Shown here in pieces: positions 8,707 to 61,598 of a stretch of DNA of 64,000 nt. The notes under the pieces are model-generated. The model worked only from the letters and a program-made list of their open reading frames with translations. It was not told the origin of the DNA and did not search any database. Each line of letters begins with the position of its first letter. Position 1 is the first letter of the stretch. The stretch lies in assembly GCA_977030845.1 (NCBI GenBank), contig OZ365110.1, forward strand, positions 21,700,001-21,764,000, given 5' to 3'. This DNA comes from Fimbriosthenelais zetlandica. Lineage: Eukaryota. The position numbers were made by a program, and so were the translations under genes.

Positions 8707-11700
8707 TTACTTCTTAAACAAGCTCTTGCCCTTGTTCTTTTTCTTCAAAGTGGAATCTTTCTCCTCTTGTGTGAATCGTATCATGTAGTTGTATACATTC
8801 AGCATGTCCGTATCAGAATCTTTCTTTCTCCGTGCGTATATTGAGAACATGTAATTGCCCGGTCGCGTTAAGGAGATGTTAAATTTGGCTTTCTTGCCAT
8901 TCTCCTTCATGGATACCTTGTCCCGGTAGTCCTCGTTGGGCTCCTTTGTCATTTGATAGGACAACTTGAGGGCCTCACTGAGACCAATTTCAATGGTCAG
9001 TGTCCCTGGTTCACTTTTCTCAATGGTGGCATCGCGATGAGACAAAGCCTTGAGACCGAGTTCATCCCAGTGTGGGGATGGTCCCCAGCGTTCCTTGGCC
9101 ATCTTTTGTGAGGGTTCTACCTTGGAAACTGTGATATCCACTGGGTCAGTGACTCGGGTACAGTTCAGGAGGTACTTGCAGGCATGGGCAAGTGTATGAT
9201 TATCAGCAGCATCTTCAGGGCGGGCGTATATATCCAGCCCGTACTGGCCAGGCTGGGGAGGGCGACACCTGACGGTCAAAGCATCATCTAACACGGAGTA
9301 GCTCACATACTTTTCCAGCAGGTAATCTTCCACTCCATTCATGCGCAGTTTACACAGGAAGTGTAGAGGTCGGGGAATCTTGAAGCGGATCTCTGTCTCA
9401 TTGTCGAAGGACACCACACCTGTCATGTGGGTAAGCGGTTTGAGTCCAAAATGACGGATACCTTTACTCGGACCCCACTCACCAGAGGCACAGTTAGGGA
9501 GGGGGTGCATTTTACCAGTTAGTTCTTCACATACCACCTGAAATAAAATTGAAATCAATTAATAACTTTCATTTTCGTAAAATAACAGGTAAATGCGTAT
9601 ATCTCTACAATGGTAAGATAGAAATACAAAATAATATATTTATGAACTTCCTGGGGTAGCAAGATTTGAATTCTACAAAAGCCATTGAGCAACCATCACC
9701 TGATGCAATACAATCCAATGGAATATTATATTTTAAATAATATTGCCTGTTGAAGTCTATAGACAATAGTGTAACCATCTCACTGCGCTCGGCTTATGAT
9801 AATATTTTATAAACACACGCACGTACCTTGAATTTACAAGCACACTTAAGCCTGAAGGGCATCATGGTAGCATTGGGGTCGTCGCCGATCTTGTGGGAGT
9901 CGTCAATCTTGTTGGCAAACACCTCCAAGAAATAAGCTGCTGGAGTGGGAACGTGCACGGAGAAGAGAGCATAGCCATCGACGATGGAATGGAAGACAAA
10001 TCTCTCAAGTTTCGCTCCTCGGAATTCCGTCTCGTTCCGTCGTTCCCGGTCGGCAAATCGTATTTGATAGTGGAAGACGAGGTCAGAGGAAAACTCCTGG
10101 GGCACTCGAACCTTGACCTGAAATTCACATGTTTATTTATTGCTCATTTCCAATTCCTTCTAAAGGACGCCCTCGGGATATGGATACTTCATAGAAACGA
10201 GTTTCCTTGGAAAGCCTCGGGCATTTCAGAGAAAAAACCGAAATAATCTATTCAAATGCAAACAAACTATCAGCTGAAGTACATTAGCTTTAAAGTAAAC
10301 AGACCATGTATATGATAGGCAATGCAAGTCCATAGATATACTTCCCAGAAAATGCAAGAATGTTTCTTATTCCTTATTATAAATAAACATTTAGCGGACA
10401 TTTTCATACTACATATATATGCAAACCAGACCAAACTGCAATTTTATTGGAAAATCATCATTTTTTCCAGGACATTTCCAGTAGTGCATGACTGGTTTCC
10501 CAGGGTTATCCAGTATAGGAAAACGATTTCACGGGCATTCTGTGTTGAAGTAAAATTTCAGGCTTGTTGCCTATTAATAAGTAAAGGAAAAACGAGGGAA
10601 AATTTACCTCTGTACCTCCCTTGCTGTCTGTGTGTAGCACAGCACGTAGATCTCTATCAAACTCCAGCCCGTAGTGGAAGAAGACGGAGCGTACAAACGG
10701 CATGGCTTCAAACTCCTCCAGTGTGATGGGTCGCTCCATGAGCTGCCACTGAGGCTCAGACGCCCAGAACTCTTGGATGAACTCATCAGGGTCAGTGAGG
10801 AAATAATGCTCGTCATACTGGTAACGGATCTTGTCTTGTTTCTTGTTGCTCTTCTCCCGGGGTTTATCCTGCACGTCTTTGTTCAACACCAAATGTCTGC
10901 AAATTAAATTATACACACATATTACTAACTTGGCTGTATGGGAGGGATCTTTTTGTATGTATACATGTATAATATTGTTTAACGTCTAGTCAGTAATCTT
11001 TTAGCTATCTCAGGACAAGAGGAAACACGCTGTTAGCACACAATGGTCGACCTTTCTCGGACGGCAGCAATGGTTCTTTACAGGCCTCTCATCAGAGAGA
11101 GTATAAGGGCAATATCGCTGGCCTTTGATACCTTGATACACCAGTTAGCAGCACTGGCAAGTTCGGAGAATGCATTCGAGTAGAACACAGATGGCATTTT
11201 TTTGATAATATTGGGAAGAGGAGGCTCTATGGCCTGGTGGTTTTAATTGGCAGCAAAGTTTGTTTTACATAGTCCCACAGACAATGGGAGGCATGGCCCA
11301 ATAAGCAACACTGAAGGGTGGAGGCCAAATTGCAAATTTCAAGGTTACTCAGGGACCCAGTCCTGCTATATTGTATTCCAACAACCCGAACACTTTAGCC
11401 ACAACCCCAACCAAAACTCGGGTATAATAAACAGTTCTTCTTGATGGTTATTGATCAGTGAAATTTATATGTTTATGTCAAGAATGGAAATATTCCCAAA
11501 TATTTTATTCAAAATTCACTTTTCAGACGCAGCTTCATCATATCAAGGTGTTCAAAGTTAACCTAGTTTATGGTAACTGAAAATTTGGAAGTGTTTATCG
11601 GGTTCTCCTCCGTTTTGTGTGAGTCTAAATTAAAACAAGAATTCTCTAAAAAAAAAGTCTTACCTGGCTCCCCAGTTACATTGCACGGGCCACCAGTCGC

Positions 11701-23700: not shown

Positions 23701-26700
23701 TCAGAGTGGCTTCAGGGGTAATCTGCTTAATACGCCCAACAGTCTTCCCTATAAACATAACTATGCTAATTCAACACATCTTATACATTGGTGGTTTTTT
23801 TTGAAAAGATCATTGGAAAATGGGGCACAAGAAAAAATGCGTTTGATAATTGTTTTAATTAGATCGATTGAAGTGAGAGTCGAGTGTGTCACACTAGAGG
23901 TGGTAGATGAGATTCAAATTAAAAAAAATATATTAAAAAAACTTGTGTGACTTTCTGGATGTGCATGTTTGTGGATTGTTAAGAAATAGTTACAAAAATA
24001 AAAGGATTACATGTCAATGATAATTAATTAGAGTTGGAATGTTAAAATATGAAGGTTCACTATAAGGGTCGACACCCGCAGTATAAGTTCTGTATATAGA
24101 CTCAAATTATCCATTTACAAGAGGTGATAAAACGGTGAAAATGGAGGGGAGGATTTTATTAGGCAATAAAAATTGATGAGTATAGTCTGAGTGACATACA
24201 TAAACAGATTACATTTGGGATAAATAAAAACATGTCGTGCATGGTCAATTAATAAACATGGTGTAGGGATTCACACTAAAAAACTACATATGAATCACGA
24301 ATGCTATAAAGTTGCGAGTGAAAATAGTATAATAAATGTAAGGTCATTATTATGATTAATAGGTTTTAGTTAGATATCTAACTTCATTAGAAATTCACGA
24401 CATGATTATAGTAATAAATGAAACTTTATTAATCTTACAATATTACCGATATTTGGAGACATTATTTTCTAGACATTTATTTGTGTGATTTCTGGGGGGA
24501 AGGCAGGCTGACAAAGGGTTCCAAGAGCAGATAGCTATCAGATAATTCAAATATCAGAGAGCCTGTCCTTAGAAAGGGACCTGTCTGAAGAGAATGGATG
24601 GTTTCCCCAGATAAATTACCATATCTTTGGACCAACGTTCATGTCAAAGGCTGCATGAGTGGCAAGTGAGAGGCTATGCCAATCAATAGGGATTACGATT
24701 AAAGGCCACCTGCATGTCAATGGTCAACATGTGTGATTGTTATCATACCAACAATGGTATCACACCCCTACTCCTGACAGAGGACAAACATTAGCCTGAA
24801 TGGGGTACGATCTGGGTTTACCTGTATGCCCTTCTCCCACTCACATCCCCTCAGGGCAAACCCCATGCTAAGGTAGAGGTGAAATAAGGTCCGAAGATGG
24901 CAGTGGACTTTAAAATGCCTTACAAAGAACCTATATAGAAAGATCAATTTATTCCTGTTTAGGTTCTATAGCTTACAAATGTTTTGCATATTGAGAGGAA
25001 CCACGCCCTTGTGTCAAAACATACAAGGTCAAGAGATTTTATTCTGAATATTTTATAATATAAGCAGTAGATCAGGGTGAAAAGGAGTATCGGTATGTTA
25101 TAAAATGGAACATAGCCATCAGAAGGAAAGTGGGCCAGTAGTGCGACGATCTAAGATGAAAATAGTCTGGTTTTACAGAGGATAATTCCGTCTTATAGAA
25201 AGGTAGCTAGCTTATGGCAGACTGGTAAAGATGCCTATGATAATCAGAGCAGAACTTGTAAGTAGAGGTAGGAGGGAGAAGGGGATAGAAAGAGTGGGAG
25301 GAGAGAGTGAGTTAGGGGTGGAGATGGGATGGAGAGGGAGGGAGTAGAAAGGGGGAGGTGGAGGGGGAAAGGGTAGGGAGGGAGGTGGAAGGGTAGGGAG
25401 AGAGGGGTTAGGGAGAAAGGGGTAAGGGAGAGAGAGGGAGGAGGAAGAAAAAGGATGGGAGAGAGTGAGAGAGCCACACCGTAACCAAGTCTGTATTCTA
25501 AATTGCCAGTTATTTTGAATCTGCCTAATCGATACAAAGTGACAGAAACACCTGGACATTATGTGAAGTATTTGTATGTGAAACAATACATGGACAGCCT
25601 GCATCTTGGATGCTTATACTTTGGTACAGGTATATACGGGCATAATACGTTGGATTCAACATTAAAATTGCATTTAAACGTCAATTATTCCAGACCAAAG
25701 TTCTAACTGGGTGCTTGTTTGTGCGCTTATCTCACACTTCGTGAGTCGGCAAGCTAACAAACAAATAGGGTGAAGAAGATGGGAGAATAAAGCACAGGTA
25801 AACTGAGGCTTGAATCTCATATGGTTATACACTGACAGATTCAGAGGACGAGACAAGTTGAGAAATAATTATATGGCGAATCTATTGCTTGGGAAGCAAA
25901 ATATTGTCCCAGAAACAGGGCCAAAAGACCTCGTCATGGTCGCCTGGTCAGGGTATATGGAAAGGTATTCACTCCAATATACATCGAAGACGATTCAAGA
26001 ATATTTATTACCTTCCCGTGGGAGCAAGTGCAAATCTCCCCTTATGCAATATTCATTTTTAGTTTCCAGTTGAAACTATTAAATAGATCTCAAATGGATT
26101 CAGTTATGAAATAAAATTTACTGAAACCAAAAAATGTCAACAGTTCATTTTTTCCCTACATGAATAATAGACCAAAAGTTGCGGAATCATTTTGCTTGGT
26201 AATGCAGCTGTAATAAATCAGCTTCCATGACTCGGGGATCCAGAAACTAGCGTGAATTCATATACTTCCTCATGAGGGAGGTTCAATACCTAGATCTCTT
26301 CCATCTGTGACATAGGTTGTAACATTACAAATAGTTCAGTGTTTAGAATTGAGCTGGTTTTCATCCAAGTCTGTGATAGTGTATTAACCAGACAGGGAGC
26401 ACGTTTCCCAGCTAGATACCATCATGTATGTAAACCTGTGGTGTACATTAGGGTCGTATAACTAAAGATGATCCCCACCTGTCCCCACTACCCAGTACCT
26501 CCTCTGGTATGTGAGGAATGTAGGCGCCAGCGTTGCCCACAATACACCTTCAATGACTTTCAGGTACATTATGCACAACAAAGCTATTGTATATTTGAAC
26601 ATCTAATCCGATGAGACACTTCACACAACAATATTCAACGCGGGTTGACCTTTTTTCTCCATCGGATGCAATTTCAAACAATCCTTTTCAAGAGTACTAT

Positions 26701-35700: not shown

Positions 35701-36229
35701 ATTCTTAGTTGATTTTTTATTATTTGGGGGAAGAAATACTCACCACATAAGCTGGAAAGTGATGTTTTGCGTTTGTTTGCTTGTACTTCATTTGAAACTG
35801 GTTCTGAGCTGAGACAGGTTGCATGATGTGCATGGCGCTCATATCTATCTGAGGAGCCCTGCCTCTCAACATGTCGTTGGCCCTTCCATGAGCCTTGGGG
35901 GCCATGAGGGCATTCTTGATGCCCACGGCATTGGCATCCACTCCAGCAGACATCACCTTGGCGACGTGCTGTCCACAGTATACTTCCTTGTCCCGAACAT
36001 CCGTGCCATTGGTAAAGTATGTTTTCATCGTCAAATGCTGTCGACATTGCACACATTTGAAACACGATTTGTGGAAGATGACATTGTTGACGGGGCCGAG
36101 TTTTTCGGCGTAGTACACCTTGTCGCCACATCGTTGGCAGGTATCGATGACTGACTGTGGAGGTGATTGGAAAAGACTGCTAAGACTGGACGGCATTGCC
36201 GTCAAGTTGGCTGTTTCAGTGGCCGCCAT
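8707..36229 (-). CDS. hil: Hillarin-like protein: N-terminal LIM domain, coiled coil, transglutaminase-like (KY/hillarin) domain and C-terminal beta-repeat region; 968 aa
   Basis: Ten exons with GT-AG sites and matching phases: 36229-35744, 16681-16448, 16146-15934, 12952-12773, 12629-12547, 12424-12281, 11819-11664, 10896-10608, 10117-9827, 9537-8707 (2907 nt, divisible by 3). Motifs: LIM CQRC...FHKSCFKCVQC...YCGQH; ARAIFRWITVKDLN; LFMRLCSYAGL; TWNAVLIDGDW..QCNWGARHL; YDEHYFLTDPDEFI; LAHACKYLL. Confidence 0.93.
14900..15020 (+). repeat. GA-rich polypurine low-complexity tract
   Basis: Run of gagagggg/ggaggag-type units; produces a spurious S/P/L-rich ORF on the minus strand. Confidence 0.85.
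18050..18228. mobile_element. ~180-bp foldback/MITE with ~45-bp imperfect inverted repeats
   Basis: gtggatcacagacattgggggcattgcataatcccgcgagcactcg (18051-18096) is the reverse complement, with a few mismatches, of cgagtgctcgcagtattatgcaactccccaatgtcagtgatccac (18183-18227). Confidence 0.7.
20722..20855. promoter_or_regulatory. Candidate intronic enhancer: ETS/AP-1 composite plus kB-like sites
   Basis: GGAAGTGAGTCA at 20722-20733; GGAAAGCCCC at 20748-20757 (GGGGCTTTCC on minus); GGGGAAGCCC at 20811-20820; CACTTCCT at 20848-20855. Confidence 0.35.
25270..25465 (+). repeat. GA-rich polypurine low-complexity tract
   Basis: Nearly pure purine stretch (ggagggagaagggg...). Confidence 0.85.
33007..33054. 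repeat. Perfect 24-bp tandem duplication
   Basis: tacacgtgaaagatccaagtatat x2. Confidence 0.95.
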
Positions 36230-38826
36230 GTTCCGTCTGTAAGTTAGGGTGTGTCGTTTTGGGCCACACTCTGGTACTCCTACACTACCATACAACTCCC
36301 CAACACCTGGTCTTCCCACACCGCCAGAGAGATAGATATGTCAATATATGTCAGTGAAAAAACTTCACAGGTGGTCATCAAATGTTCAATATCCTCACTG
36401 TTCTATCCAGATAGAGGTGCCCCTTTCAGCAATGGTAGAAGAAGGGGGTGTGATTGTCTCTCTAGGTCCAGGTACTCCTCTGCTTTCTATGCGTGGTGAT
36501 CACTGAAGACTGAAATGTGGGCATGTGTGAGTGAGTCAGGCTATGGTGGAGGTGGAGAGAAGCAGTCCCAACTAGGCCGCCTGCTTGCCTGCCTACCTCT
36601 ACCTACCTGTGTAAGGTAGACCGACCTGGTAGTCTCGCTTCACTGCGCAGCAAGCATCACTATCACACGACCATGTTGGGAAGCATTCCCTTACAGGTAG
36701 ACATGACCGTGGGATTCTCTATCTCTCCTGATCTCTACCTTGTATATTATATAGACTGTGACCTCTCCCTCCTCTTATATAGACAAAATGCAGCCCAAAA
36801 ATGTCATATCATTTCAGGCGGTTACAAAAACTATCAAGTTTGCCCAGGTTTTTAAAGGTTTTCCCAACAATAGAGTGAGTTTTTGGAGATCGTGCAGGAC
36901 TCCTGAGGTATGATGCTATTTATAGATCTCTCCCCAACCGAGGGCCTCAATTACTTGTGGCGTTAACACAAGTGTTTGGGTTATTTTCGTAAAAACGAAA
37001 GTATTTAGTCACCTGCGATGGAAGCTTCTCCGCGTCCCATCAACACTGTTTATGGCTACAACACTGACTTGATGAAAGTCCAGACACATTCATATTTTTT
37101 CTTGATTAATTGTGGGGAAAACCACAGCTGATGGTACATAATAGGCTATTGATCGAGCGAGGGATAATGCAGTGCAGTCTCGCCTTCCAAAGATAACCTC
37201 GTCTGCTGCAAGTTCGAGGGGAAAATAGGAGCGTTACACGTGCATGTGAAGCAGTAATATAATGTTGAAATTGTCAAAATATTCCTGATAAAAATCCGGG
37301 GATAAAACCACTGCCATGCAACCAGGTAAATTGTTCTGTTTTATGATGTTCCAACTCACATTTCCTGGATTATTGATTATATCATTTTAGGGGAAAAAGT
37401 CCTTTTATTCGATCCTGGGTGAACTTTCCCCTGTTTCCAGTGTGCGAAAAATAGAGTTGCCTTATAGATAGTGGTTGAAATCCATTTATAACTTTTATCT
37501 CCTGTTTCTTGATGAAGTGATAGAGATGAAGAATGGTTAAGTAAATCCTGTATAATTCAACACGTTGTATTTATAGGTTCAGGGATAGGAGGACCGGGGA
37601 CAGAGGAGTTAAAACCCTGTCATTTCCTATTGATGTGTGTCCTGGGAGGAAATGACTTTATCCTATTGATACAATGACCGGCTTCCGATATCCTTAAACT
37701 ATTATGTCATCCTCTTTCTATGTGGTTACAGACTGTTATATATGCTGCAACCAAACGGAAAAGTTACTTGTTAACTTCTGAACAGGATTTAGGCTGGTGA
37801 TAATAGTCCCGAAATCCAGTTACGATGTGAGGTGAAGTCTCCAATGAGGTACTTCTTTGATGGGTACAGTCATGTTTTTCTTCCAATCATTCATAAAATT
37901 GTATAAATTATGATTATTTGGATATTATTGTTTTCTTTTGATTGGGTGCAGGTCGAAGGTTAAAGGTTTTCGTCATCCTCGTGATCTGCAATATCCGGCT
38001 TCACTTTTGTCTTCTCATGGTTTGGAGGTCTTTATTCTTAATTGAGGTTCATGTTTCAATTGAGCCGTAATATATCTTCTGCGTTACACCACCTTGAGTC
38101 ATCCTCTTAAAATAAAATGGAAAAAAATATATGAATGTATTTAATTGAATTTAAAATATGCCCTGAAATAATAATTAAACATACAATGAATTAAAAGCAT
38201 GATGATGAGTGTATCAGATATTACATATTAAATATATAAATGTTATTTAAGGGATACTGAATCATGCATAAAATAATATACCGAGGCAAAGGCTAGCTGG
38301 GACAAACAAACTGCTCTCATGCACTGCCATGACATAACTCCGGAAAAGGGTTAGTCGCTTCCGCTAGACCAAGAAAATACCAGATCTAGGAGAGTTAAAA
38401 CGTTGGTATGATAAAGAGGAAAACATCAACACAGTATTGTAAAATAAGAGACCCATCCCAAGAAGTTCAAAATAGACATGACAGGGAACAATGTTTCCGG
38501 GGGCATACCAATGCTTAAAAGTCACGAGTTTTGCTTGAAAATCCTGGCAATATTATAAAATTTATATCCTGGAACAGCTAATCAAGACGATTACATTATA
38601 AGATATATTGATCCGGGATAAAATGGAATTTGTATTAAATATTTTGAGCCGAAATATTCCAATATTTAAATATATTGGAAATCTCCCATGCTTGGAAAGT
38701 AGTTCCCTCTGGTGTTTTTCCTGTCATATTATTTGGTCCTTGAAAACTAGAGGATCTAATTCACAATAGATGGCAGTACTATTGATTGAATAGCCGTGGA
38801 TGCTCTGTGCTTCCAAGCACTTATTA

Positions 38827-40422: not shown

Positions 40423-43400
40423 TTATTTGCGACGTAAACATAAGATGGCGAAGATTTCAACCAGTAACTCCACAGCTTCTACAGCCGTGACGAGGGAGGC
40501 GCCCACATAAAGACCAACTGTTCCTCCAAAGTCAGACCAAAACTGAGAACTCTGCAAAACACATTTTCAACCAATATGCTTAATATTTTTAAACATACCA
40601 TGAATTAATACGGATTATTTATGTTTGTGGGTAAATTATCTAGACCAACTGATCCTTCAACGTCTGATAAACTCTAGGAACTCTGCAAGGATATATTAAC
40701 AATCATTATCCTTACAATCTTACAATTAAATATATCTTGAATTAATATTTCCCCATAATTTTAAATTCTATCTGAAGACAAATATCATGTATCCACTCAC
40801 CTCATAAGTTTCCACTTCCTCCATAATTTTGGACGTCAAAGTTTGAATGTATATTTTGACGCTGGCCAAATTTGCCCTGTAAAGAGGTAATTATTAATGA
40901 ATGCCCATGATTACACAATCGTTATTCAGAAATGGTAGTGGGCAGTGACGTGGTAGAACGAAGTTTAAGTAAACATATCCAATGCATTTCATAGCAGGGA
41001 GACAGGACCCATAATCATGATCTGTTGGATGTGCATCAAAAGATGGCATATTGATAGCTATTTTTTTTATATTTCAGTGAATAATTTTGGGACTCGAAGT
41101 CTAGTAGGGACCCATTTCTTAATCATATATATTATCAGTATACATTGTATATAAGACTTACCTGATATGGTCTTGACGTTGAGGGGCTGATACGTTCTTG
41201 AATCTCTCGCATGTGGATGGATGAATAGTATCACACAGGTTGGAAATCAATTGGTACTGTATAAAGGCGAATTGACAAGAAATTACATAAAGTACTGACG
41301 ATTCTAAAAACATGTCATATTAGGAGAAGATAAAATACAGAATTCTAGGAATGAAAATTGAATGTCAAAAGAATTATATTATGTGCAAAACATACCCAGA
41401 CACCCGGGTCGGGCCATCGTGTACTTGAATGTCTAACATTATAGATCTTTTCCCTGAAATTAGATGGGATCATTATTTACGATGGCCGGATGCTCAAATA
41501 TTATAACGATACTCAGAACCGCAATGTATCACTATCAGAAAACAAAAGTTTCCGCTGAGAAATTACTCTCAGGTATACCGTATTATAATTTTCCCAGAGT
41601 ATACGAATGGATCATATTATTAACTCGGACATATAGAAGCTGGAAATATTGAATAACTTACTTGCAAGGTGAGCGACATTTGCAGGGCATGCTACTTTTT
41701 ATGATAGATTCAATAGCATCCCACATACATCCACAATCATCTAGAAATAAAAGCAATATACTCGAAATAAATTTTGAAAATCCACACTTCATTGATATCG
41801 AACTTATACTTATTAAGACAATTGAATGATAATCTGAAAGCAATTATCGATGATATTCTATTCGATCATCTAGCCACTTATATTTAAATTTACGTTTCTC
41901 ATTGGGTTTCATTTCGCAGACACAGTGACGAAGAGTTTCTCTTTGTTTTTTAGAGTAGTTCTCCACATAGTCGGGACGCATGCAACCACACTGCTCAGCA
42001 ATGAGCCGGTCCTCACACGTGTCCAAACAACCCTGAAAATATAATAAAATGTCACAATAATTTACGGCTATGTTTTTAAATTTTAAATTTTATTTTTAAA
42101 TTTAAGTCTTTACGCCATTTTTTCCAATTATCTATATTAACTTCAAAAGTATTTGAGAACATACACATGTTGTTCTGGGAATTAGTTTTTGCTGGTTCTA
42201 CGCCAATGATTTTAATATCTGTATTGCCTCTAAAATTTTTCTGGGAACAAAAGTTGCTTACCTCTCGAGTGTATTCATAGCCGAGGTTCGAGGTGAAGTT
42301 GGTAACGTCACCACATGGCGTGAACTGTTTTCCTAGTCGGGTTACGTTATCCTGGAAATATACACAGGGCAAATCTACTAGAAATTTGAAGATGTTAAAA
42401 AACAAATAAAACTAGCTAATCCATACAAAAACTATTCAATGCTATAATTATTATACCTCACAGCATGCGGGATGGAAGTAAATGGGTGTTTAATTTTAAG
42501 CTTACCGTATAGAGAGCTATGTAGGTTTTGAAGCCTGGTGCAACAGAGAAACTAAAGTCGCCCATGGTAGGTTTAGTGCCGTAAGGATGAATACGGAACT
42601 TAAAGCCAGTAGCGTGATTAACCGATCTAACATACTCGAACTCTTCAGTGTACAAAACCAAGCTAAGACCTGCAATTTATGGAAATATTTATAATTTTCT
42701 TCAGCAACACAAAATAAGTTTTTATTCACAAGTTGCTGATCACTGTCTTTGTTATTTGAACTACAAGGACAAAAACATATTATTTAATGCATTGTACCGT
42801 AAAATAATAACCAGACTTCATGGGGAGCCAATTTCTAGTTAAATTCATATACGTGTATATTATCAGGTATTAGATCATAAACATAACACGAATTGTCACT
42901 TACCAAAACGAATTCCTGAGCGTTTTGAAACCAGAGTAAAATTACGAATGTCATGACTGTTGAACGTATAACAGTTACCAAAATCCCTCGAGAACGAATG
43001 ACTGAAATTCCTGATAAATCAAGTGAAATTTAAATTAATTGACCAAGAGTACAAATTGATTTTTTAAGATAAAATCAACAGTCATTTCGTCCACTAGCAC
43101 TGTTTCCAGGAATATGCTCAATAAAATTTTTGATTGTGTAAGTGAAATCCATGTTTTGAGCATTATTTTATTCTTGAAAATAAGGAGCCAATATCAAATA
43201 TTTTACGTACTGGTGGGAGCATAGACGGCCATTAAATGTACAGTCCCTTATCATGCGTTTGGCCTGGTGACCCTTCTCCTTTCGCTGGTCACTGAAACAA
43301 ATAATATATACGATATATAAGGTATCCCATATTTCATATTATTTAAAGCTTGGAATTTCAATCATGTATTTTAAAGTCTCCAATATAAGTTCAAAGTTAA

Positions 43401-46400
43401 GCATGATTCAACAGAAAAAGCTCAATAATATATGCAATTTTAAAACTGTTAGCTATTTAAACATCGACATAATTATAGGTTCTTTAAATTATTGAACTGT
43501 AATAACCTAAGTTCTGAACGTACAGTGGTATTAGTCCAACAAGGTAATTGTATTCTTCCAACTTTCTGTCATGAAGTGATCGTGGCCCATAGCCAGTCTC
43601 TTCGTCGCCCGTTAATCCAGATCCAAAGTCGTATACAGGATCGGCGTGACCAACCCATTCTAGATCAAAAAGAATCTGGATTAAACTTTCAGAAAGTTTA
43701 TTCAACAAATTCGCACTTCTAAATGAAAAGTGACAAGTTCTGGGTTGCAATGTTATATGTGTACAGGGTACACATACAAAAGGTGGTATAGGATGTTTTC
43801 TGCAAGTTGAGATGAATGTCTATTGTTATATGAATGTGTAAGTAGTTTGAGAGGTAATGATAAGTAAGTCCGTTCAGTTACAGGGTCAGATTTAGACTGG
43901 CGAGTCACCGAGGTGCTCGCTCTATTTATTAACTCATTAGGGTAGCGTCCCCCAATCCCAAGCTGGGACCGGGCGACGCTACAGGGTGTGTAGTGTACAG
44001 GGTTGTACACAATATAATTCAGATCTATAACATCACTCCCTCCCCCCTTTCCAGATGGTGCCTGCTCAAAGAGTTTGAGGAGGCATCATCTAGCTAACTA
44101 GTTTTTAGTAATTCATTCTGGGAGAAGTTAGTGAGGTTTACAATAGATAAGATTACAAGAGATATTGATTAAACATAAGGTTTGAAATTGTTGTTTAACA
44201 TAAATCAACAAAACTGAACGAGATAGAGATTGTTAATTACCTAAATTAATGAAAGCTGTTTTAACGAATATTGGGGAGTCAATCGTTTAGGTGATATTCA
44301 GATTCAAAGTTAAAACATATTGTCATTATAATCTAAAATGTAACAATGATAATGACGGGAATCATCCCTCCCCTCCCCGTAGGGGGGTGGGGTGTGAACC
44401 AATTTTAATATTTAAGCTAAATTCAAACACAAGACACTTAGTAATTACAGAATAATAAAAGATGAGAGAGATGTGATAAAAAGGGCGCGGCTGCCAATCA
44501 ACTTATAATTTGGACAAGTAATCTGGCTTCTATATCTGGCAGCGGCTACTTGATAATAAACTCAGAGTTGGGTTAGTTTAGGGTGCTATGTTATCAGTTA
44601 GGTGATAATGGGATGGAACGAAGTGACGGTTTAGTGAACACACGCTCAAGTGTCGACGTGACGCTTTCACAAGGCGGGGCACAGTACATATATTTGGACC
44701 CTTATTATACAGAAGACTAATTAAATCGAATTGATAAGGATGCAGTGTCATCTCCTGCATTCACTCCTTTTAAAGAACTTCTAACAATTATAAGTTCGTG
44801 GAGCATTGAAACTTTGAGGAATTAACCGGACATACACTCTGTCCCGACCACAAAGTAAAAAAAAACACACATAATTAATACCATTAATTTCAAACATTTA
44901 AAAAAAAACACACACACACAATACAGGTTATTTTACCCTAAATCATAATTGCTTAAATGATCAGTGTCTTCAAGTTGTTAATGAAGAATATTTTCTGCGT
45001 TTGAAATGGGCGCGTTTAAAGTTTCTAAAATTCAATTTGCCCTCCAAGTGTCATTAATGAGTCCATATGGCATACATATACACGCGGCTGGGGTGGCGCA
45101 CTTCCTGATGGGGAGATAATGGCCACGAGCTGAGTTGGATAAGGGCCACGTGAGTAACTTGGGTTTCTGCTGGTACTGCTAGTGCATACAAACATTGCAT
45201 AATAACGATTGAACAAACCAGGCAAAAGATTCAAAAATAAATTATTTGATATACCAGAAAGTGCATCTGTCCAAAGTTCAAATTTCAAAGGTAAAATATT
45301 ATCAAAGTATACATCATTAAATGTAATGTTTCCTTATGAATTTTGTATGACACTGGGTAACAGGTAAGGGGGATTTGTATTAAGCAATTTGCAGTAATTT
45401 GAATAATATAATATAGAGGTAAACCGAAAAAAAAAATACTGTGTGCTTTTATGAAATTGAATATTTGAATAACACTAGTTCAGAAATTATTAAACCAATT
45501 GACCTAGTCAGCATTGACACATGTAATATAGCAGTCACAAATTAAATCAATGAGACACCTCAATAGCCAGTAAGACTTGTAAATGAGCCAGAAATCAGAG
45601 ACACTAATTAGTGCCTCAGCCTATCCATGATGCACGTTACCAAGCTGCCACCAATTTATGGTTAGTCACTGCCTAAGCACAAGAGCGTAGCTGTGCTACA
45701 TGAAGGAGCAACTCAGTTGGCTTTGGGCTTGGCTCAACTGAGCTGTTTTTTCACGCGGGTGCAGCTGATTCCACGCGCTCCTATGGCGTTAGCCGTATAA
45801 ATGACCAAGTGACAACAGATCAAAGGGGATTTGGGGGCGTCTATTAGTCACTGGTCAAGGCAAGTCGGCACGAAGCTACAAAGCTTTATGACAGTGACGA
45901 CAGCAAGGACGCGCTCCGACGAAGCGTCATGGGGAAGGGTGGCTTGATAGACAAACCACCTGGCTCATTACAGAGGTCACGAAGACTGACCTTTGGGTGC
46001 ACACAAACCAATCCGTTCCTGCCATAAACATAGTTGCTGATAAGCGTTGGTCATTAACCTCTGTGATTACATTACAGTGTTTGAACATATACAGAGTGTT
46101 AGGGATGAAAAGCGGGATGGTTTCCTTAATGATGGGAAAGTATGTGACTGTTTAAGAATTAAGGTTTACTGTTTATTTCAAGGTGGATGGTTGAGTCCCT
46201 TTGAATGTCGAGGAATGTATTTGAACTAAAGAAAGTGACTTGGGATTAAGCCAAAGTCATGGATTAATTTTGATGAAATAACTTAAAAGTCGAGAAGTAA
46301 TTCAGAAATAATATATTAATATACACACACAAAAAATTACATGCTTGTTTTACTATTTGAGAAAAAAAATGATATAGACAAAATGATGTTGCCCCAGTGT

Positions 46401-49400
46401 CAATGAGGAATTTTAAGATGCTAATAGATAATTATATATATTTCCTGGTTTGAACAATACATGCAAGTCCTACCTTAGTTTTCTATTTGTTCTTCTTGCG
46501 AACTACGTGGAGGATCTAATAGCCAACGTAGCACGAAGTTCAGTTGATTTTCCACAAGTCTAAAATGAACGTCATTATGATTATTTTGTTCCCTCAAATA
46601 TTTTTCTAAAATTGGATTGATCAAAGATGGTAGTTCTGTCATGTCCAAATAGGTCCTATTATCCGTTTGTGTGGATTCCTCACATTTTGGGGGGTTGTCC
46701 GTACCCACAGCAGTGTCGACTAACGATGGTCCTGTGTAGTCCTCGGTATCAACGTTAACATTGTCGGTATTAACACCAATGTCAACCTTTGATGTCTGAT
46801 TGACACTTACTGTTTTGTATTTGTTAAGCTCCTCGGTCAAGTTTTGAACTTGTGAGCTTAAGTCCCTCACTTTGCTCCTCAAGTGGGTACATTCACATGT
46901 GGCATAATTTACATTATTGTAGTTAATTCTCTTGTTTCTATTCCTTTGGCATCGTTGCCAGTTTCCTTTTCTTCTTTTCCATGGTTTTCTATATACGTAA
47001 TTTTCATGGCTATGTTCTTCCCGTGTTTTATGGAGTCCGTTTGTCCTCAGAGTAAAAGGGAGGTTTGTCTGATCTCTATGGCGCGCTTTATCATTATGAA
47101 TAGTCTGTGTGAAGCAGCGTCTTGCAAAGTGGCCTGTTTTGCCACATTTGAAGCAGGACCTGTTATAGGCAGGACACTGATGTGTGGCTGTCCATGTGAA
47201 GCCACACCTATAACAATCCTCTCTCCAATTTATCATTTTGAAATCCTCATATGGGAGATAACCATGTTCTTGATAGTTCCGTAGGTGTTGGCTGGAACTA
47301 TGTAGGTAGGAGAAGGAATCTAACCCCTGAATCGGTCCAAAAATTCCAAGTTTTGCAAAATCCACAAAGTAATATTGTGATGTTGAGAGGTATCGAAATT
47401 TCGGGCTTCTCCACCAGTGAGATGAATGTCTATTGTTATATGAATGTGTAGGTAGTTTGAGAGGTAATGATAAGTAAGTCCGTTCAGTTACAGGGTCAGA
47501 TTTAGACTGGCGAGTCACCGAGGTGCTCGCTCTATTTATTAACTCATTAGGGTAGCGTCCCCCAATCCCAAGCTGGGACCGGGCGACGCTACAGGGTGTG
47601 TAGTGTACAGGGTTGTACACAATATAATTCAGATCTATAACAAAGTCATCATAAAGAAATGGCCCACGACTGATGCTTAAAAATACTGACATTCCAATAT
47701 TTGTTAATTCTTTCCATCCTGATGCACAAGTACATTCATTGCAGGATGTATTACTTACAATTTTTTAATCACGAAGTGTTTAATAGCAGAACATGATCTG
47801 CAATTATTGAGAAAGTAATTAAATTTGCAAGATCAATTATGTAAATAATTGGCGGAGAATTTAAGGGGGGAATACCTAGTCATTTAGGGACGTAATATTT
47901 ATGAAGCATGTATTTCCGTCTTAGTTTGCCTCCACATACATATTTAATTGTATAGTATTATGTACATTATGAGCGCTTGTTTGACTTGCTCTCCAGTCTC
48001 ATGCCATAATCAAACATGGCCATGGTAAGGCGATGCATGGAAGTTTGAAGGGAGGCGAGTGGGGGCTATTTTAGTCTCAAACGTGACAGTGAGTGGGAAA
48101 CCACTCATCTACGTTCCCACGCCCTGCGTATTTGGAGATGCAAATAAAACCCCAGCACACTTTAGAATTGAGGGCTAACACTTAATTCAACACAAATGTT
48201 AAACGCAATGTACAATCTGTTAGTCTACCCTATTCCAAAACCATGCAGATTTTGCGCTTTCAAATATGAATAAATGGATTGAGGCTGATGCATGTGAGCA
48301 TGCATGTGATTAATCGAGAAATTATATTTATCACGCAACCTATGGGGATTGGCATCCATGGGCAAGTACAGTGATATCATTATGAAATATTCCTCTATAG
48401 TGTTTGCTATCGATCAGTGGAAGGACATGACTCTAGGAAGGATTATAAGCTGGTGTCACATTGAGGGAAATTATGTTGATCTACATCTGGGGTCCGTTTC
48501 TAAACAAATACATGTATTTTGTATACAAACACTATGACCAATATCCCTGCATCCCAGTTTGGAACGGGCCCCAGATTTATAATGCATACCTGTGCCAGGA
48601 GGCTTTCCAGAAATGTTCACATAACCAGTCGGGAGTGAATTCATTTTAATGAATTTTTCCAGAACAGTATCTGCCGTCTGGCTGAGCCGGATGGAATTTT
48701 GGTTGCAGATGGTAACACTGGGGAACGGTTGGGTTGAAGTCCTAATGGATATCGCCACATTCGATTCATATTCCAGGTATTTGACAACTATGAGCGTTGT
48801 CTGAGAGAGGAGAAAGTTCATGAAAATGTGCATTCAGGTTTAACCAATTAAAACATTTTTCCAAGGAAAAAAATAGGCAACCATAAAGAAAAATGTTTAG
48901 TCTCAAATAAAGATAGGTCTTGACTAGAAAATTGATGCGAAATGAGAATGATATCATAAGTAAGAAACCTGAAGGCTTTGCTTAAAGTGAACAGTTTAAT
49001 TCCTAGGGTATTAAATAACGCCACCTGTCATTAGGTAAATGTACTAACACTCGATCATCCTCGATGTCCCCCCTTGTGTTTGGCGTCATAAAAATTTCAT
49101 TTTTTCAACAGCGGAAACTTGTGTTTTCATGACAACAAATGAGAAAGAAAACAAAGAATGTTTACCTGAATTATTGCTCCAGTGATGGCACAGAGAAAGA
49201 CGCAGAGCCAAATTCCTTTTTTCCACCAGGCCGTGGTTTGCCCCATATTAGAGATACCCTGAAGTGAAGTTCGTCCACAGAATTTCCTCCAGGATTTCCT
49301 TATTGAAGGCACAGAATCATCCTCTTCATCTTCCTTCTTCTCATCCACCACCTTTTCCAACTTTTTGTTTTCCAGGCCGTACTCGGGGCCCAATTTTCCA

Positions 49401-50020
49401 TTTCCCAAATCCTATAATTATGACGATTCAAGACGAGTATTGATAGCAAATATATAGGCGCAAAATATATTTGGGCAAGAGACAGAATTAAACTTTAAAT
49501 TAAAGCACTGAAACAGTAATATCAATACAGGATTGCTTGAATAATAAATTATGAAATCTCTTTTAAAATCAATTTTCATAAGTAGCCTAAGGCGTATGTG
49601 CAAAATACACACATTATTTCTTTCGAATTCCCAAGTCGTGAATTATGTTGAAATACAAAATCGTTTAAATAAAAACTTTAGAATTACATGTACTAAAACT
49701 CTTGACCTCAACATAATAATTATTAAATGTTCACTTTCACTGCTATTTAAGGAATAACCATGGAAACACTGCCAATATTATGTAAAAATGATTTCTGAAT
49801 GGCCACGTTCAAAATGGTTAAATTTTTCCCTTTTAATACAGCGCCATGTAGAATAGGACTAGTTTATGTAAACCATTTGTATGAAGCAGAGCTAAGTAGA
49901 AAATCTTGAAAGATGAAAGAGGGGTACACCTTGTTCCCCTGTTTGATCTAAAGGTATATTTACCTTCTGCACATCCGTCGCAAAAGCAAGACTCGTTGTC
50001 CCCATTTCCTTATTTTCCAT
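40423..50020 (-). CDS. DEG/ENaC (amiloride-sensitive sodium channel superfamily) subunit, possibly FaNaC-related clade; 555 aa
   Basis: Fourteen exons with matching phases: 50020-49964, 49411-49166, 48800-48590, 43659-43524, 43291-43211, 43010-42904, 42669-42506, 42351-42262, 42032-41894, 41740-41662, 41453-41396, 41256-41162, 40876-40801, 40551-40423 (1668 nt). Motifs: TSLQG; TM1 WKKGIWLCVFLCAITGAII; FPSVTICNQN; GHQ...CTFNG; FGNCYTFN; GLSLVLY; Cys-rich thumb; RWP; TM2 FWSDFGGTVGLYVGASLVTAVE. Confidence 0.93.
43808..44032 (-). repeat. 3' LTR
   Basis: 224/225 identical to 47418-47642; preceded on the minus strand by the PPT. Confidence 0.95.
46475..47236 (-). CDS. Retroelement zinc-knuckle (nucleocapsid-like) protein with basic patch, coiled coil and TQT-type motifs; 253 aa from the AAAATG start
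   Basis: CYRCGFTWTATHQCPAYNRSCFKCGKTGHFARRC: a degenerate knuckle plus a canonical CX2CX4HX4C, the arrangement typical of Gypsy gag C-termini. RKPWKRRK basic patch; heptad LRSKVRDLSSQVQNLTEELNKY. Confidence 0.85.
   Translation of the reverse strand: MINWREDCYRCGFTWTATHQCPAYNRSCFKCGKTGHFARRCFTQTIHNDKARHRDQTNLPFTLRTNGLHKTREEHSHENYVYRKPWKRRKGNWQRCQRNRNKRINYNNVNYATCECTHLRSKVRDLSSQVQNLTEELNKYKTVSVNQTSKVDIGVNTDNVNVDTEDYTGPSLVDTAVGTDNPPKCEESTQTDNRTYLDMTELPSLINPILEKYLREQNNHNDVHFRLVENQLNFVLRWLLDPPRSSQEEQIEN
47418..47642 (-). repeat. 5' LTR
   Basis: Followed on the minus strand by C + PBS TGGTGGAGAA. Confidence 0.95.
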
Positions 50021-60020: not shown

Positions 60021-61598
60021 ATGGAAATCCCCATCAAAGTGATATCTCTAATGATAGTGATAATCAGTGCCCAGGCTGAGAAATCCACGAAGATACTTCT
60101 CTATCCTTATGGACATTGCATGAACTCTCATCTGCTGGTTGTGGAACGTTTAGGAGCTATTTTATACGAGAAGGGCCATGATCTGCATATGTTGATCAAT
60201 TCCCAGTACAAGACATTCAGGCCTTCCACGGAAGAGGAACCCCTCTCCCCGATGACTCTGGTTGAATTCCAAGCACCCAGCAATTATACCACCGTCTGTG
60301 ATTATGATACAATAGATTACTCTCTTTATTCACCGGTGCAGGAACGCTTCAACTTCTTCATAGAAACATCGGCTAAATACTGCGAACAGATCGTGAGCGA
60401 CGAAGCCTTGATGAAAAAGCTGAAATCAGAGAGGTATGACTTGTTCATTGTAGAAGCTGTGGATCCATGTGGCCGTATTCTAGCTGACTATTTAGACGTG
60501 CCTTTTATTCCTCTTATCACAACGGGTTTAGGACATTGGGATGGAAACTTCCGACCCCCATCCTACATCCCCTCCCCTATATCACCCTTCACGCCTAACA
60601 TGAACTTTCTGGAAAGGGCTGGAAATTTCTTCATGAAACTCATGTACGAAAGCATTCCTGTCATCATGGGTTTTGATGCCAAGTTTGAAAAACTGAAGCA
60701 AACGTATAACCTGAATACATCCATCTCTTTAGCCGACACCTTTAAACGTGCCTCTGTCAAATTGGTCAACTCAGATTTTACCTTTGAATATGTTGCACCT
60801 ATCGAACCGGACACTGTCCTTGTTGGTGGCTTTGCCATCAATAAACCCAAACCACTACCTGAGAAGCTCAGAGCATTTGTTGAAGGATCAGGAGAACATG
60901 GAACTATCATCTTTTCCATGGGGACAGTAGTAAAAAGCTTTGATGATAAGTGGTATCGGATGTTTTTTGATGTTTTCTCTCGGATCCCACAAAGGGTCAT
61001 ATGGCGATTCTGCAGATCATCTATACCTGAGGGTTTGGTTGTCCCGGACAATGTCCTTTTGGTCGATTGGATCCCACAGACCGACCTACTGGCTCATTCC
61101 CAAGTGAAACTGTTCATCACACACTGTGGGCTGAACAGTGCCATGGAAGCAGCCTATTATGGCAAACCCGTGCTGGCAATGCCCATGTTTGCTGATCAAT
61201 TCAGCCAGTCGGGCAAATTGACCAAACATGCAGGTATGGGCCTTGAGGTGGACCTTTTCTCTGTCACTGAGGCATCCCTCTACCAACACTTGACTCAAGT
61301 GCTCTTTGATCCCAGCTTCCAGCAAAACGCAGAAAAAATGTCCAAGAGATTCAAGGACCAGTTGGTCACTCCTGTGGACAGAACCCTCTTCTGGATAGAG
61401 TACGTGATGAGACATAGTGGTGCTTTCCATCTCAAATCACAAGCGCATAAACTGACTTGGGTCCAGTATTTTTGTCTGGATGTACTTCTTGCTGTGGTTA
61501 TCATAGCATTTTTATGTTTAAAATTGGCAGCCATATCTTCAACAGCTTTGATCAAAATCACCCTGAGAATTATATTTCCGAAGAGAAAGATTTGTTAA
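60021..61598 (+). CDS. UDP-glycosyltransferase (GT1, UGT/CGT type), ER type I membrane protein, single coding exon; 525 aa
   Basis: Signal peptide MEIPIKVISLMIVIISAQA; catalytic His region NSH; UGT signature WIPQTDLLAHSQVKLFITHCGLNSAMEAAYYGKPVLAMPMFADQ; FWIEYVMRH; QYFCLDV followed by a TM helix; basic ER-retrieval-like tail KRKIC. Confidence 0.97.
   Translation: MEIPIKVISLMIVIISAQAEKSTKILLYPYGHCMNSHLLVVERLGAILYEKGHDLHMLINSQYKTFRPSTEEEPLSPMTLVEFQAPSNYTTVCDYDTIDYSLYSPVQERFNFFIETSAKYCEQIVSDEALMKKLKSERYDLFIVEAVDPCGRILADYLDVPFIPLITTGLGHWDGNFRPPSYIPSPISPFTPNMNFLERAGNFFMKLMYESIPVIMGFDAKFEKLKQTYNLNTSISLADTFKRASVKLVNSDFTFEYVAPIEPDTVLVGGFAINKPKPLPEKLRAFVEGSGEHGTIIFSMGTVVKSFDDKWYRMFFDVFSRIPQRVIWRFCRSSIPEGLVVPDNVLLVDWIPQTDLLAHSQVKLFITHCGLNSAMEAAYYGKPVLAMPMFADQFSQSGKLTKHAGMGLEVDLFSVTEASLYQHLTQVLFDPSFQQNAEKMSKRFKDQLVTPVDRTLFWIEYVMRHSGAFHLKSQAHKLTWVQYFCLDVLLAVVIIAFLCLKLAAISSTALIKITLRIIFPKRKIC

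What the first reader, a model, noticed from the sequence alone, without database searches (positions are those of the whole stretch)
43808..47642. Very young LTR element that encodes neither capsid nor pol: a 'nucleocapsid-only' parasite
All cis signals are intact (TG..CA LTRs 224/225 identical, AAGT TSD, PBS matching the 3' end of tRNA-Ala ...UUCUCCACCA, PPT), so it transposed recently. Its single ORF begins directly with the two zinc knuckles that normally end Gag. They are followed by ~220 residues with no protease, RT or integrase motif, then ~2.4 kb without a long ORF. An intact ORF in a non-autonomous element suggests the protein is selected, for example to load its own RNA into a helper's particle. 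This differs from TRIMs (no ORF) and from gag-only elements that keep the capsid. Novelty is an inference.
Basis: partly seen in the sequence, partly recalled or inferred. Interest (0 to 1): 0.75.

Follow-up and report, generated by a model that had tools for sequence, protein, structure and literature searches.

The report
Young non-autonomous LTR retrotransposon copy
A recently inserted 3.8-kb LTR retrotransposon that cannot copy itself lies in an intron of an ion-channel gene; its one intact gene encodes a small zinc-knuckle protein with a leucine zipper but no capsid, and one copy cannot show whether selection keeps that protein.

Summary
The LTRs are 225 bp each (43808-44032 and 47418-47642) and 224/225 identical. 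AAGT target-site duplications flank them. On the minus strand there is a PBS-like 17-mer one base after the 5' LTR and a 20-nt polypurine tract against the 3' LTR. A 253-codon ORF (47236-46475) starts 7 residues before two zinc knuckles.

Pfam finds only zf-CCHC plus weak coiled-coil-type matches. No capsid, RT, RNase H or integrase is detectable in the element or anywhere in the window. The remaining 2442 nt carry 44-57 stops per sense frame.

So this is a non-autonomous LTR element, moved in trans. Its knuckles most resemble those of Ty3/gypsy gag-pol proteins.

Three points are new:
- The odd first knuckle (CX2CX7HXC) is a conserved subtype. Unnamed "knuckle-first plus coiled-coil" proteins in other animal assemblies share it.
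- A protease-type FLIDTGA motif lies 20 codons past the stop, in a broken frame.
- The roughly 210-residue tail has no relatives.

The claim of selection is untested. Neutral survival of the ORF since insertion has P about 0.92. No other copies could be fetched, and the host genome is absent from the protein collection.

It is best seen as a capsid-less variant of the gag-only (TR-GAG-like) kind. Interest is moderate.

The parts
43804..43807 (.). Target-site duplication AAGT (left)
   Evidence: Read directly; identical to 47643-47646.
43808..44032 (-). 3' LTR (element sense is the minus strand), 225 nt, TGT...TCA in sense
   Evidence: 224/225 identical to 47418-47642.
44033..44052 (-). Polypurine tract GGAAAGGGGGGAGGGAGTGA abutting the 3' LTR
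   Evidence: 18 of 20 bases are purines.
44366..44378 (-). Second PPT-like purine run GGGGAGGGGAGGG, about 330 nt upstream of the real PPT; role unknown
44053..46474 (-). Internal region without coding capacity; mosaic G+C of 26-52%
   Evidence: 44-57 stops per sense frame over 44033-46474 (2442 nt, PPT included). No Pfam match in the open stretches scanned, the ten longest on each strand. No Rfam match. No RT or integrase similarity by tblastn with gag-pol hits. Composition.
46390..46410 (-). FLIDTGA, a retroviral-type aspartic protease active-site motif in a broken frame; a possible relic of pol
   Evidence: It is the only such motif in six frames of the 64-kb window, and 4 of 3000 shuffles of the internal region contain one. 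Its flanks are not protease-like and Pfam is blank. The frame has stops at 46485, 46434 and 46266.
46475..47236 (-). ORF of 253 aa plus stop: knuckles, basic stretch, leucine zipper, acidic N/T/D-rich stretch, two C-terminal helices
47174..47215 (-). Knuckle 1, CYRCGFTWTATHQC (CX2CX7HXC), followed by CPA
   Evidence: The same subtype occurs in P0014, P0016, P0034, P0059, P0094 and others.
47114..47155 (-). Knuckle 2, CFKCGKTGHFARRC (canonical CCHC)
   Evidence: Pfam zf-CCHC, E 8.5e-6. Retroviral nucleocapsid chains in the PDB match at E 6e-4 to 1e-2.
46910..47113 (-). Basic stretch, aa 42-109 (17 K+R, pI 11.2)
46805..46882 (-). Leucine-zipper-like helix, aa 119-144, with a/d positions L119 V123 L126 V130 L133 L137 Y140 V144
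   Evidence: Heptad register. Weak coiled-coil-type Pfam matches over aa 86-158. The low-confidence model predicts a helix at 110-141.
47237..47399 (-). Leader between PBS and ATG; it holds two of the three short out-of-frame upstream ATGs (47265, 47250; the third is in the LTR at 47547)
   Evidence: LTR plus leader RNA folds better than shuffles (z -4.06).
47400..47416 (-). PBS-like 17-mer TGGTGGAGAAGCCCGAA, one base after the 5' LTR
   Evidence: tRNA identity not tested (no tRNA gene in the window).
47418..47642 (-). 5' LTR with a TATA-like TATAT (47626-47622), an 18-bp-class hairpin (47592-47552) and AATAAA (47540-47535)
47643..47646 (.). Target-site duplication AAGT (right)

Best explanation
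This is a recently inserted copy of a non-autonomous LTR retrotransposon. It has Ty3/gypsy-like ancestry, judged from its nucleocapsid knuckles, and lies in sense orientation inside an intron of an ASC/DEG-ENaC channel gene.

Shown: all cis elements needed for reverse transcription and integration are present. These are the LTRs with TG..CA ends, a PBS-like site, a PPT and a 4-bp TSD. There is no capsid, RT, RNase H or integrase.

Inferred: its RNA, made from the 5' LTR, is packaged, reverse-transcribed from a tRNA primer and integrated by proteins of an unidentified autonomous helper.

Its single ORF encodes a 253-aa protein built as two CCHC-type knuckles, a strongly basic stretch, a four-heptad leucine zipper and an acidic tail.

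Inferred, at about 0.4: this protein binds the element's own RNA and self-associates, which helps that RNA enter the helper's particles. The element then works like a gag-only (TR-GAG-type) parasite that kept only the RNA-binding end of Gag.

The region from the knuckles to the FLIDTGA relic probably descends from the NC-to-protease part of a gag-pol ancestor.
For: - Structure.
- Coding content: Pfam gives only zf-CCHC plus coiled-coil-type hits. The PDB matches are retroviral nucleocapsids.
- Exhaustive phmmer search: 248 hits, and the best matched stretch of each of the 150 listed starts in or just upstream of the knuckles; it runs past query 130 in only ten, and none matches the tail on its own.
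- Long hits with the same knuckle module are Ty3/gypsy gag-pol proteins (P0071, P0084) and one copia (P0111).
- No RT or integrase is found in the element or the window, and no domain in the open stretches of the 2.4-kb remainder that were scanned.
- The ORF is not chance: 0 of 20000 shuffles are open over the 208 post-knuckle codons. The adjoining sequence has one stop per 14-18 codons.
- The FLIDTGA relic sits in the expected place downstream of the knuckles.
- The first knuckle keeps a conserved subtype with all ligands.
- The zipper register is shown.
- Intronic position: ASC exon pieces lie on both sides on the same strand.
Against: - Only one copy could be examined. No family, helper, expression or polymorphism data exist.
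- tRNA identity of the PBS is untested.
- The protease relic is a 7-residue motif whose flanks are no better than shuffles.
- The tail has no relatives, and its structure model is unusable (pLDDT 40), so RNA binding and self-association are read from motifs only.
- Intactness of the ORF at this locus is expected without selection (P 0.92).
- The knuckle type also occurs in a copia-type polyprotein, so the superfamily assignment is soft.
Confidence: 0.7

Rival explanations
1. Recent chimera with a leftover ORF. In one or a few replication cycles, template switching or recombination removed the capsid part and replaced pol with unrelated sequence. The knuckle ORF is then an undecayed remnant of the parent's gag-pol and has no role of its own.
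For: - The internal region is a compositional mosaic (26-52% G+C) with no trace of RT or integrase. That fits replacement better than slow decay.
- The ORF would stay open by chance over the short time implied by the LTRs.
- The tail is an orphan, as fast-evolving NC-protease linkers often are.
Against: - It needs two separate recent losses: capsid on the 5' side and pol on the 3' side.
- It also needs an ATG placed 7 codons before the knuckles.
- The FLIDTGA relic sits in a frame already riddled with stops only 20 codons from a 253-codon open frame. That points to long differential decay.
- Knuckle-first ORFs recur in other genomes.
Confidence: 0.3
2. The ORF is the complete, unusual Gag of a lineage whose structural protein has no retroviral capsid fold. 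Knuckles come first, then a basic stretch and a coiled coil that provides assembly, much as LINE-1 ORF1p does. This copy is a pol-less derivative of an autonomous partner with the same gag.
For: - Unnamed proteins P0014, P0016, P0094, P0041, P0065 and P0144 have knuckles at aa 16-75. P0014, P0016 and P0094 carry exactly our first-knuckle spacing; the other three carry a close variant two residues longer.
- They have no Pfam domain besides zf-CCHC, and three of them share a conserved short N-terminus.
- They have a multi-copy cluster (7 members).
- In the P0065 model the tail forms long helices with pLDDT 80-93. These match only generic helical proteins and no capsid.
Against: - The tail of our ORF is not detectably homologous to theirs. 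The HMM score is -1.6, matched or beaten by 1722 of 2000 shuffles, and hhalign aligns the 45 knuckle columns only.
It is unknown whether they sit in LTR elements or precede a pol.
Confidence: 0.15
3. The ORF product interferes with the helper rather than helping the element. It would act as a dominant-negative Gag fragment, comparable to Ty1 p22, which inhibits particle assembly.
For: Truncated Gag proteins that restrict their own family are documented for Ty1 (PMC4599808, PMC4551931). A knuckle-plus-zipper protein could compete for genomic RNA.
Against: - Ty1 p22 is the capsid C-terminal half and acts through Gag-Gag contacts. Here the capsid part is exactly what is missing.
- An element that blocks its helper would also block itself, yet this copy moved recently.
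Confidence: 0.05

Closest known systems
[quoted passage not shown] 2015, PMC4350172)
   Same: Under 4 kb, with LTRs, PBS and PPT, a single gag-derived ORF, and no protease, RT, RNase H or integrase. They are presumed to be mobilised in trans.
   Different: TR-GAG ORFs keep the capsid part (UBN2/copia gag similarity) with the zinc finger near residue 275. Here no capsid similarity exists and the knuckles are at residues 8-41. The host is an animal, and the ancestry is gypsy-like rather than copia-like.
LARD and TRIM non-autonomous LTR elements
   Same: They have LTRs, PBS and PPT, no pol, and depend on a helper. Like a LARD, this element has a long internal stretch (2.4 kb) with no coding capacity.
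   Different: TRIMs are much shorter and have no ORF. LARDs are larger and non-coding throughout. This element has a 253-codon intact ORF.
BARE-2 and Tos17 (gag-defective elements that use a partner's Gag; PMC4350172 introduction, PMC3977881)
   Same: They are partial elements that remain mobile as one half of a two-component system.
   Different: Those elements keep pol and lack gag. This is the opposite arrangement.
Ty3/gypsy (Metaviridae) Gag nucleocapsid domain
   Same: It has the two-knuckle module C-X2-C...CPA...C-X2-C-X4-H-X4-C. Identity is 34% over 76 residues to the gag-pol protein P0071, and the 4-bp TSD fits.
   Different: No capsid lies upstream and no pol downstream. About 210 extra residues follow the knuckles.
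LINE-1 ORF1p (coiled-coil RNA-binding chaperone of a non-LTR element; PMC5940361)
   Same: This is a functional analogy only. Both combine a self-associating coiled coil with a basic nucleic-acid-binding module encoded by the element whose RNA it would coat.
   Different: There is no homology. The domain order is reversed, the RNA-binding module differs (RRM/CTD versus CCHC), and the transposition mechanism differs.
Unnamed knuckle-first proteins in ENA and Logan animal assemblies (P0014, P0016, P0034, P0059, P0094, P0041, P0065, P0144)
   Same: They share the same or a close variant of the first-knuckle subtype, and in six of the eight the knuckles sit near the N-terminus (in P0034 and P0059 they start at aa 73-109). 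A basic stretch and helical coiled coil follow, with no capsid domain. Identity to P0014 is 44% over 62 residues.
   Different: Their KRRRD...LPF motif and tails are not detectably related to our tail. Their genomic context is unknown.

Membership tests
LTR retrotransposon (structural definition) | Two direct long terminal repeats ending TG...CA | tested here: met
   225-nt repeats, 224/225 identical, TGT...TCA in sense.
LTR retrotransposon (structural definition) | Short target-site duplication flanking the LTRs | tested here: met
   AAGT on both sides.
LTR retrotransposon (structural definition) | Primer binding site next to the 5' LTR, complementary to the 3' end of a host tRNA | tested here: inconclusive
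   TGGTGGAGAAGCCCGAA lies one base after the LTR and ends in the TGG that pairs with CCA. No host tRNA gene was available. The tRNA-Ala assignment rests on memory of the ...UCCACCA acceptor end.
LTR retrotransposon (structural definition) | Polypurine tract next to the 3' LTR | tested here: met
   A 20-nt tract with 18 purines abuts the LTR.
Autonomous Ty3/gypsy element | Gag with a capsid domain | tested here: not met
   No gag or capsid family matches at E up to 1-5 in the ORF or in the upstream open frame. No PDB match for the upstream peptide.
Autonomous Ty3/gypsy element | Protease, RT, RNase H and integrase | tested here: not met
   Pfam is blank on the open stretches scanned, the ten longest on each strand. 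tblastn with gag-pol hits finds only the knuckles. Only a 7-residue FLIDTGA relic remains.
Autonomous Ty3/gypsy element | CCHC nucleocapsid knuckles | tested here: met
   Pfam zf-CCHC, E 8.5e-6. 34% identity to the nucleocapsid region of gag-pol P0071. The module also occurs in one copia-type protein.
TR-GAG | Under 4 kb with LTR, PBS and PPT, and one ORF only | tested here: met
   3835 bp and a single ORF.
TR-GAG | ORF similar to the GAG capsid domain | tested here: not met
   Only the zinc knuckle matches.
TR-GAG | At least two copies in the genome | not testable with these tools
TRIM | Miniature size and no ORF | tested here: not met
   3835 bp with a 253-codon ORF.
LARD | Large element whose whole internal domain is non-coding | tested here: not met
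   The intact ORF occupies 762 of the 3385 internal bases.
Knuckle-first coiled-coil proteins (P0065/P0014 group, unnamed) | CX2CG..H.CPA-type first knuckle placed near the N-terminus | tested here: met
   hhalign gives probability 99.2 over 45 columns.
Knuckle-first coiled-coil proteins (P0065/P0014 group, unnamed) | Homologous tail with the KRRRD...LPF motif and long helices | tested here: not met
   The tail HMM scores -1.6, matched or beaten by 1722 of 2000 shuffles. hhalign aligns nothing beyond the knuckles.

The most novel reading that the evidence does not exclude
Capsid-less, knuckle-first ORFs (CCHC knuckles, basic stretch, coiled coil) may be a recurrent, selected design of non-autonomous LTR elements in under-sampled invertebrates. 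On this reading the element keeps only an RNA-binding, self-associating protein. That protein coats its own transcript and delivers it into a helper's particles, which would be an LTR-element counterpart of LINE-1 ORF1p. This copy and the unnamed P0014/P0065-type proteins would then be independent examples.
Probability: 0.2. Interest if true: 0.7.

Novelty: new variant of a known kind. Interest (0 to 1): 0.4.

Why it matters
How non-autonomous LTR elements get their RNA into a helper's particles is poorly understood. The known types either encode nothing (TRIM, LARD) or keep a whole Gag (TR-GAG).

An element that keeps only the RNA-binding end of Gag, joined to a zipper, would point to the step being competed for: RNA selection rather than shell building. 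It would also give a small, testable protein for studying packaging in trans.

If the ORF is only a leftover, this is one more deleted LTR element, and its interest is limited to being a young intronic insertion that may be polymorphic.

Tried and rejected
- Relatives of the ORF: the word-index search gave none at 139-443 aa. The exhaustive phmmer search matched the knuckle region, with at most a short run into the basic stretch and nothing to the tail on its own.
- Other copies: none in the window. Nothing came from metagenome or viral contigs by protein, nor from the LTR/PBS junction 23-mer. Exact look-ups of the ORF and of the neighbouring UGT gene were absent from the 15-billion collection.
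- Leader as former Gag coding sequence: its conceptual peptide is no more similar to the capsid-NC linkers of 51 gag-like hits than shuffles are (67 of 300 reach the sum). Pfam and PDB are blank.
- Protease relic beyond the motif: the flanks are no better than shuffles (63/300 and 108/300), and Pfam is blank.
- Tail homology to the knuckle-first family: rejected.
- Structure of the ORF: the single-sequence AlphaFold model has pLDDT 40. It is too poor for a fold search, so none was run on it.
- Cryptic capsid in the related family: the P0065 model is long helices. Foldseek against the PDB gives only generic helical proteins, none at E below 0.001.
- Nested DNA transposon: the 37-nt inverted pair 45208-45244 / 46422-46458 is 70% complementary with no TSD. 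It was dismissed.
- RNA families and tRNAs: none in the element or the window.
- Human check: nothing in the window looks human. It has an intronless 525-aa UGT whose best named relatives, at 38%, are brachiopod and fish. No contig was set aside.
- The ASC channel exon pieces were scanned one by one by reference and were not joined.

Full report
**What is there**

The window holds two direct repeats of 225 nt at 43808-44032 and 47418-47642. They differ at one position (A/G at 43841/47451). AAGT flanks both (43804-43807 and 47643-47646). No other copy or solo LTR lies in the 64 kb.

The element reads on the minus strand. In sense the LTR is TGT...TCA.
- One base after the 5' LTR comes TGGTGGAGAAGCCCGAA (47416-47400). 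It ends in the TGG that pairs with a tRNA CCA end.
- GGAAAGGGGGGAGGGAGTGA (44052-44033) abuts the 3' LTR.
- The LTR carries a TATA-like TATAT, a strong hairpin (47592-47552) and AATAAA (47540-47535).
- LTR plus leader RNA folds much better than shuffles (z -4.06).

The tRNA-Ala reading of the PBS fits my memory of the ...UCCACCA acceptor end with U70. It could not be tested, because the window has no tRNA gene.

**The ORF**

The first in-frame ATG after the LTR is at 47236. The frame runs 253 codons to the stop at 46477-46475.

Residues 28-41 form a canonical CX2CX4HX4C knuckle (Pfam zf-CCHC, E 8.5e-6). The best PDB matches are retroviral nucleocapsids.

Residues 8-21 read CYRCGFTWTATHQC, that is CX2CX7HXC. 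This is not decay. The same spacing, often with the same G-[FW]-x-W and the following CPA, recurs in 13 of the phmmer hits.

The rest of the protein runs as follows:
- a very basic stretch (aa 42-109, 17 K+R, pI 11.2);
- a four-heptad leucine zipper (a/d positions L119 V123 L126 V130 L133 L137 Y140 V144);
- an acidic N/T/D-rich stretch;
- two predicted C-terminal helices.

No capsid, protease, RT or integrase family matches. The 208 post-knuckle codons were open in 0 of 20000 shuffles. The frame is therefore coding, or was until very recently.

**The rest of the element**

The remaining 2442 nt (44033-46474) carry 44-57 stops in each sense frame. The longest open stretch is 102 codons. The twenty longest open stretches, ten per strand, have no Pfam match, and the region has no Rfam match. 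tblastn with the gag-pol proteins found shows no similarity outside the knuckles. G+C swings between 26 and 52%.

Twenty codons past the stop, in another frame, lies FLIDTGA (46410-46390). This is the hydrophobic-hydrophobic-hydrophobic-D-T-G-A pattern of retroviral-type aspartic proteases.

It is the only such motif in all six frames of the window, and 4 of 3000 shuffles of the internal region contain one. It also sits where a protease would follow a nucleocapsid.

Against it, its flanks are no better than shuffles, Pfam is blank, and the frame is broken by stops at 46485, 46434 and 46266. I take it as a probable but unproven relic of pol.

**Relatives**

The word-index search found nothing of comparable length. 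The claim rests on absence of relatives, so I ran the exhaustive phmmer search with the 313-aa frame from the PBS onward. It gave 248 hits at E up to 1e-3. The best stretch of each of the 150 listed starts in or just upstream of the knuckles. It runs past query 130 in only ten of them, and none matches the tail on its own.

Long hits with the same module are Ty3/gypsy gag-pol proteins (P0071, P0084) and one copia-type protein (P0111). The ancestry is therefore probably gypsy-like, but that is not certain.

The negative result for the tail must be discounted. The host genome is not in the protein collection. The neighbouring UGT gene has a best match of 79% (unnamed), and its best named matches reach only 38% (Lingula, fishes). 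The host is an under-sampled animal lineage, and its own transposon proteins were not searched.

**A recurring architecture**

The closest knuckle matches are P0014 and P0016 (44% over 62 residues). With P0094, P0041, P0065 and P0144, they are unnamed proteins of 280-344 aa. Their knuckles sit at residues 16-75.
- They have no Pfam domain besides zf-CCHC.
- They share a KRRRD...LPF motif. Three of them also share a conserved short N-terminus, so the start is real.
- The P0065 cluster has seven members at 90% identity or more, with further diverged relatives. This looks like a repeat family.
- An AlphaFold model of P0065, built with the 8-sequence alignment, gives long confident helices after the knuckles. 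These match only generic helical proteins and no capsid.

So 'knuckles first, no capsid, coiled coil behind' is not unique to this window. However, the tail of our ORF is not detectably homologous to theirs. The HMM score is -1.6, matched or beaten by 1722 of 2000 shuffles, and hhalign aligns 45 knuckle columns only.

**Is the protein selected?**

The LTR divergence of 1/225 (95% interval 0.01-2.5%) implies about 1.7 substitutions in the ORF since insertion. Of all possible single substitutions, 5.1% make a stop. The chance that the ORF stays open without selection is therefore 0.92. Intactness at this locus says nothing.

What bears on selection is history before insertion. If the FLIDTGA relic is real, sequence 20 codons from the ORF has decayed past recognition while 253 codons stayed open. 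The knuckles also kept every ligand of a conserved subtype. That pattern favours purifying selection on the ORF within a long-lived non-autonomous lineage.

If instead the 2.4 kb is foreign sequence acquired recently, the ORF may be a fresh leftover. I cannot separate these with one copy. I put the selected-protein reading at about 0.4.

The element is unlikely to be a full element deleted after insertion. With LTRs this similar, a deleted pol would still be recognisable at the deletion edges.

**Mechanism**

Shown: the cis signals are present and the coding functions are absent.

Inferred:
- transcription from the 5' LTR;
- packaging into particles of an unidentified helper;
- tRNA-primed reverse transcription and PPT-primed plus strand;
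- integration with a 4-bp duplication.

Also inferred, from motifs only: the ORF product binds RNA through the knuckles and the basic stretch, and pairs through the zipper. It would then work like a minimal RNA-coating protein, by analogy with LINE-1 ORF1p (PMC5940361). It would leave shell building to the helper.

A dominant-negative role like Ty1 p22 (PMC4599808) is unlikely. p22 is the capsid half of Gag, which is exactly what is missing here.

**Context**

ASC/DEG-ENaC exon pieces lie on the minus strand at 49130-49411 and 48474-48833 (profile positions 1-91), and at 41847-42089 (positions 296-340). The element therefore sits in an intron of that gene, in sense orientation. These pieces were scanned one by one by reference and were not joined. 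Nothing in the window looks human.

**Unexplained**

The ORF frame has no stop through the 135 codons upstream of the ATG. That stretch covers the leader, the PBS and the whole 5' LTR. The other two frames have 11 and 7 stops, and 10 of 20000 shuffles are open.

There is no in-frame ATG in that stretch. Its peptide has no family or PDB match. The leader part shows no order-specific similarity to capsid-NC linkers. A gag that once began in the LTR (as in Ty1, from memory), a non-AUG start, or chance all remain open.

**Verdict**

- The element is a capsid-less variant of the known gag-only non-autonomous kind.
- Interest is moderate. It would rise if the host genome shows a family of such copies with a conserved ORF.

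Noticed in passing
window 47237-47692 (minus strand): The ORF's reading frame stays open through the leader, the PBS, the entire 5' LTR and 50 nt of flanking DNA. That is 0 stops in the 135 element codons, against 11 and 7 in the other frames, and 10 of 20000 shuffles are open. There is no in-frame ATG and no family match.
   Followed up: partly
window 41847-42089, 48474-48833, 49130-49411 (minus strand): Exon pieces of an amiloride-sensitive sodium channel (ASC/DEG-ENaC) gene lie on either side of the element, on the same strand. The element is therefore intronic and in sense orientation.
   Followed up: partly
proteins P0014, P0016, P0041, P0065, P0094, P0144, P0034, P0059 (from other assemblies): These are an unnamed family of proteins, partly multi-copy, in ENA and Logan animal assemblies. 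Most have N-terminal CCHC knuckles, and all share a KRRRD...LPF motif and helical tails with no capsid domain. Their genomic context is unknown.
   Followed up: partly
window 1-2252 and 2558-3219: A satellite array with a 166-bp unit (13.5 copies, 87% matches; higher-order periods of 334 and 500). A related 176-bp array lies next to it.
   Followed up: no
window 60021-61598 (+): An intronless 525-aa UDP-glucuronosyl/glucosyltransferase gene (Pfam UDPGT, E 8e-97). Its best database match is 79% (unnamed), and its best named matches are only 38% (Lingula, fishes). The host lineage is therefore poorly sampled.
   Followed up: partly
window 8707-9558 (-) and 35720-36319 (-): Long open exons with a KY-like immunoglobulin-like domain (E 3e-39) and a LIM domain (E 3e-10).
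   Followed up: no
window 42520-42783 (-): A weak match to the CxC2 cysteine cluster of KDZ transposases (E 0.003, below the Pfam cut-off). It may be a remnant of a DNA transposon in the same intron.
   Followed up: no
window 44366-44378 (minus strand): A second purine run, GGGGAGGGGAGGG, resembles the PPT and lies about 330 nt upstream of it. On the plus strand it sits in a C-run/G-run palindrome (44365-44395).
   Followed up: no
window 4766-4827: A short tandem array with the unit TAACCCTAGAGTTAACCC. It contains TAACCC, the complement of a TTAGGG-type telomeric unit, at an interstitial site.
   Followed up: no
window 24001-26000, 25360-25465: A strong purine skew (GC skew 0.27, AT skew 0.14) with G/A-rich short tandem repeats.
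   Followed up: no
window 45690-45745 (+): On the strand opposite the element, a perfect 8-bp-stem hairpin (CTCAGTTG ... CAACTGAG) is followed by a T run, inside the G+C-rich block 45600-46100. No Rfam match.
   Followed up: no
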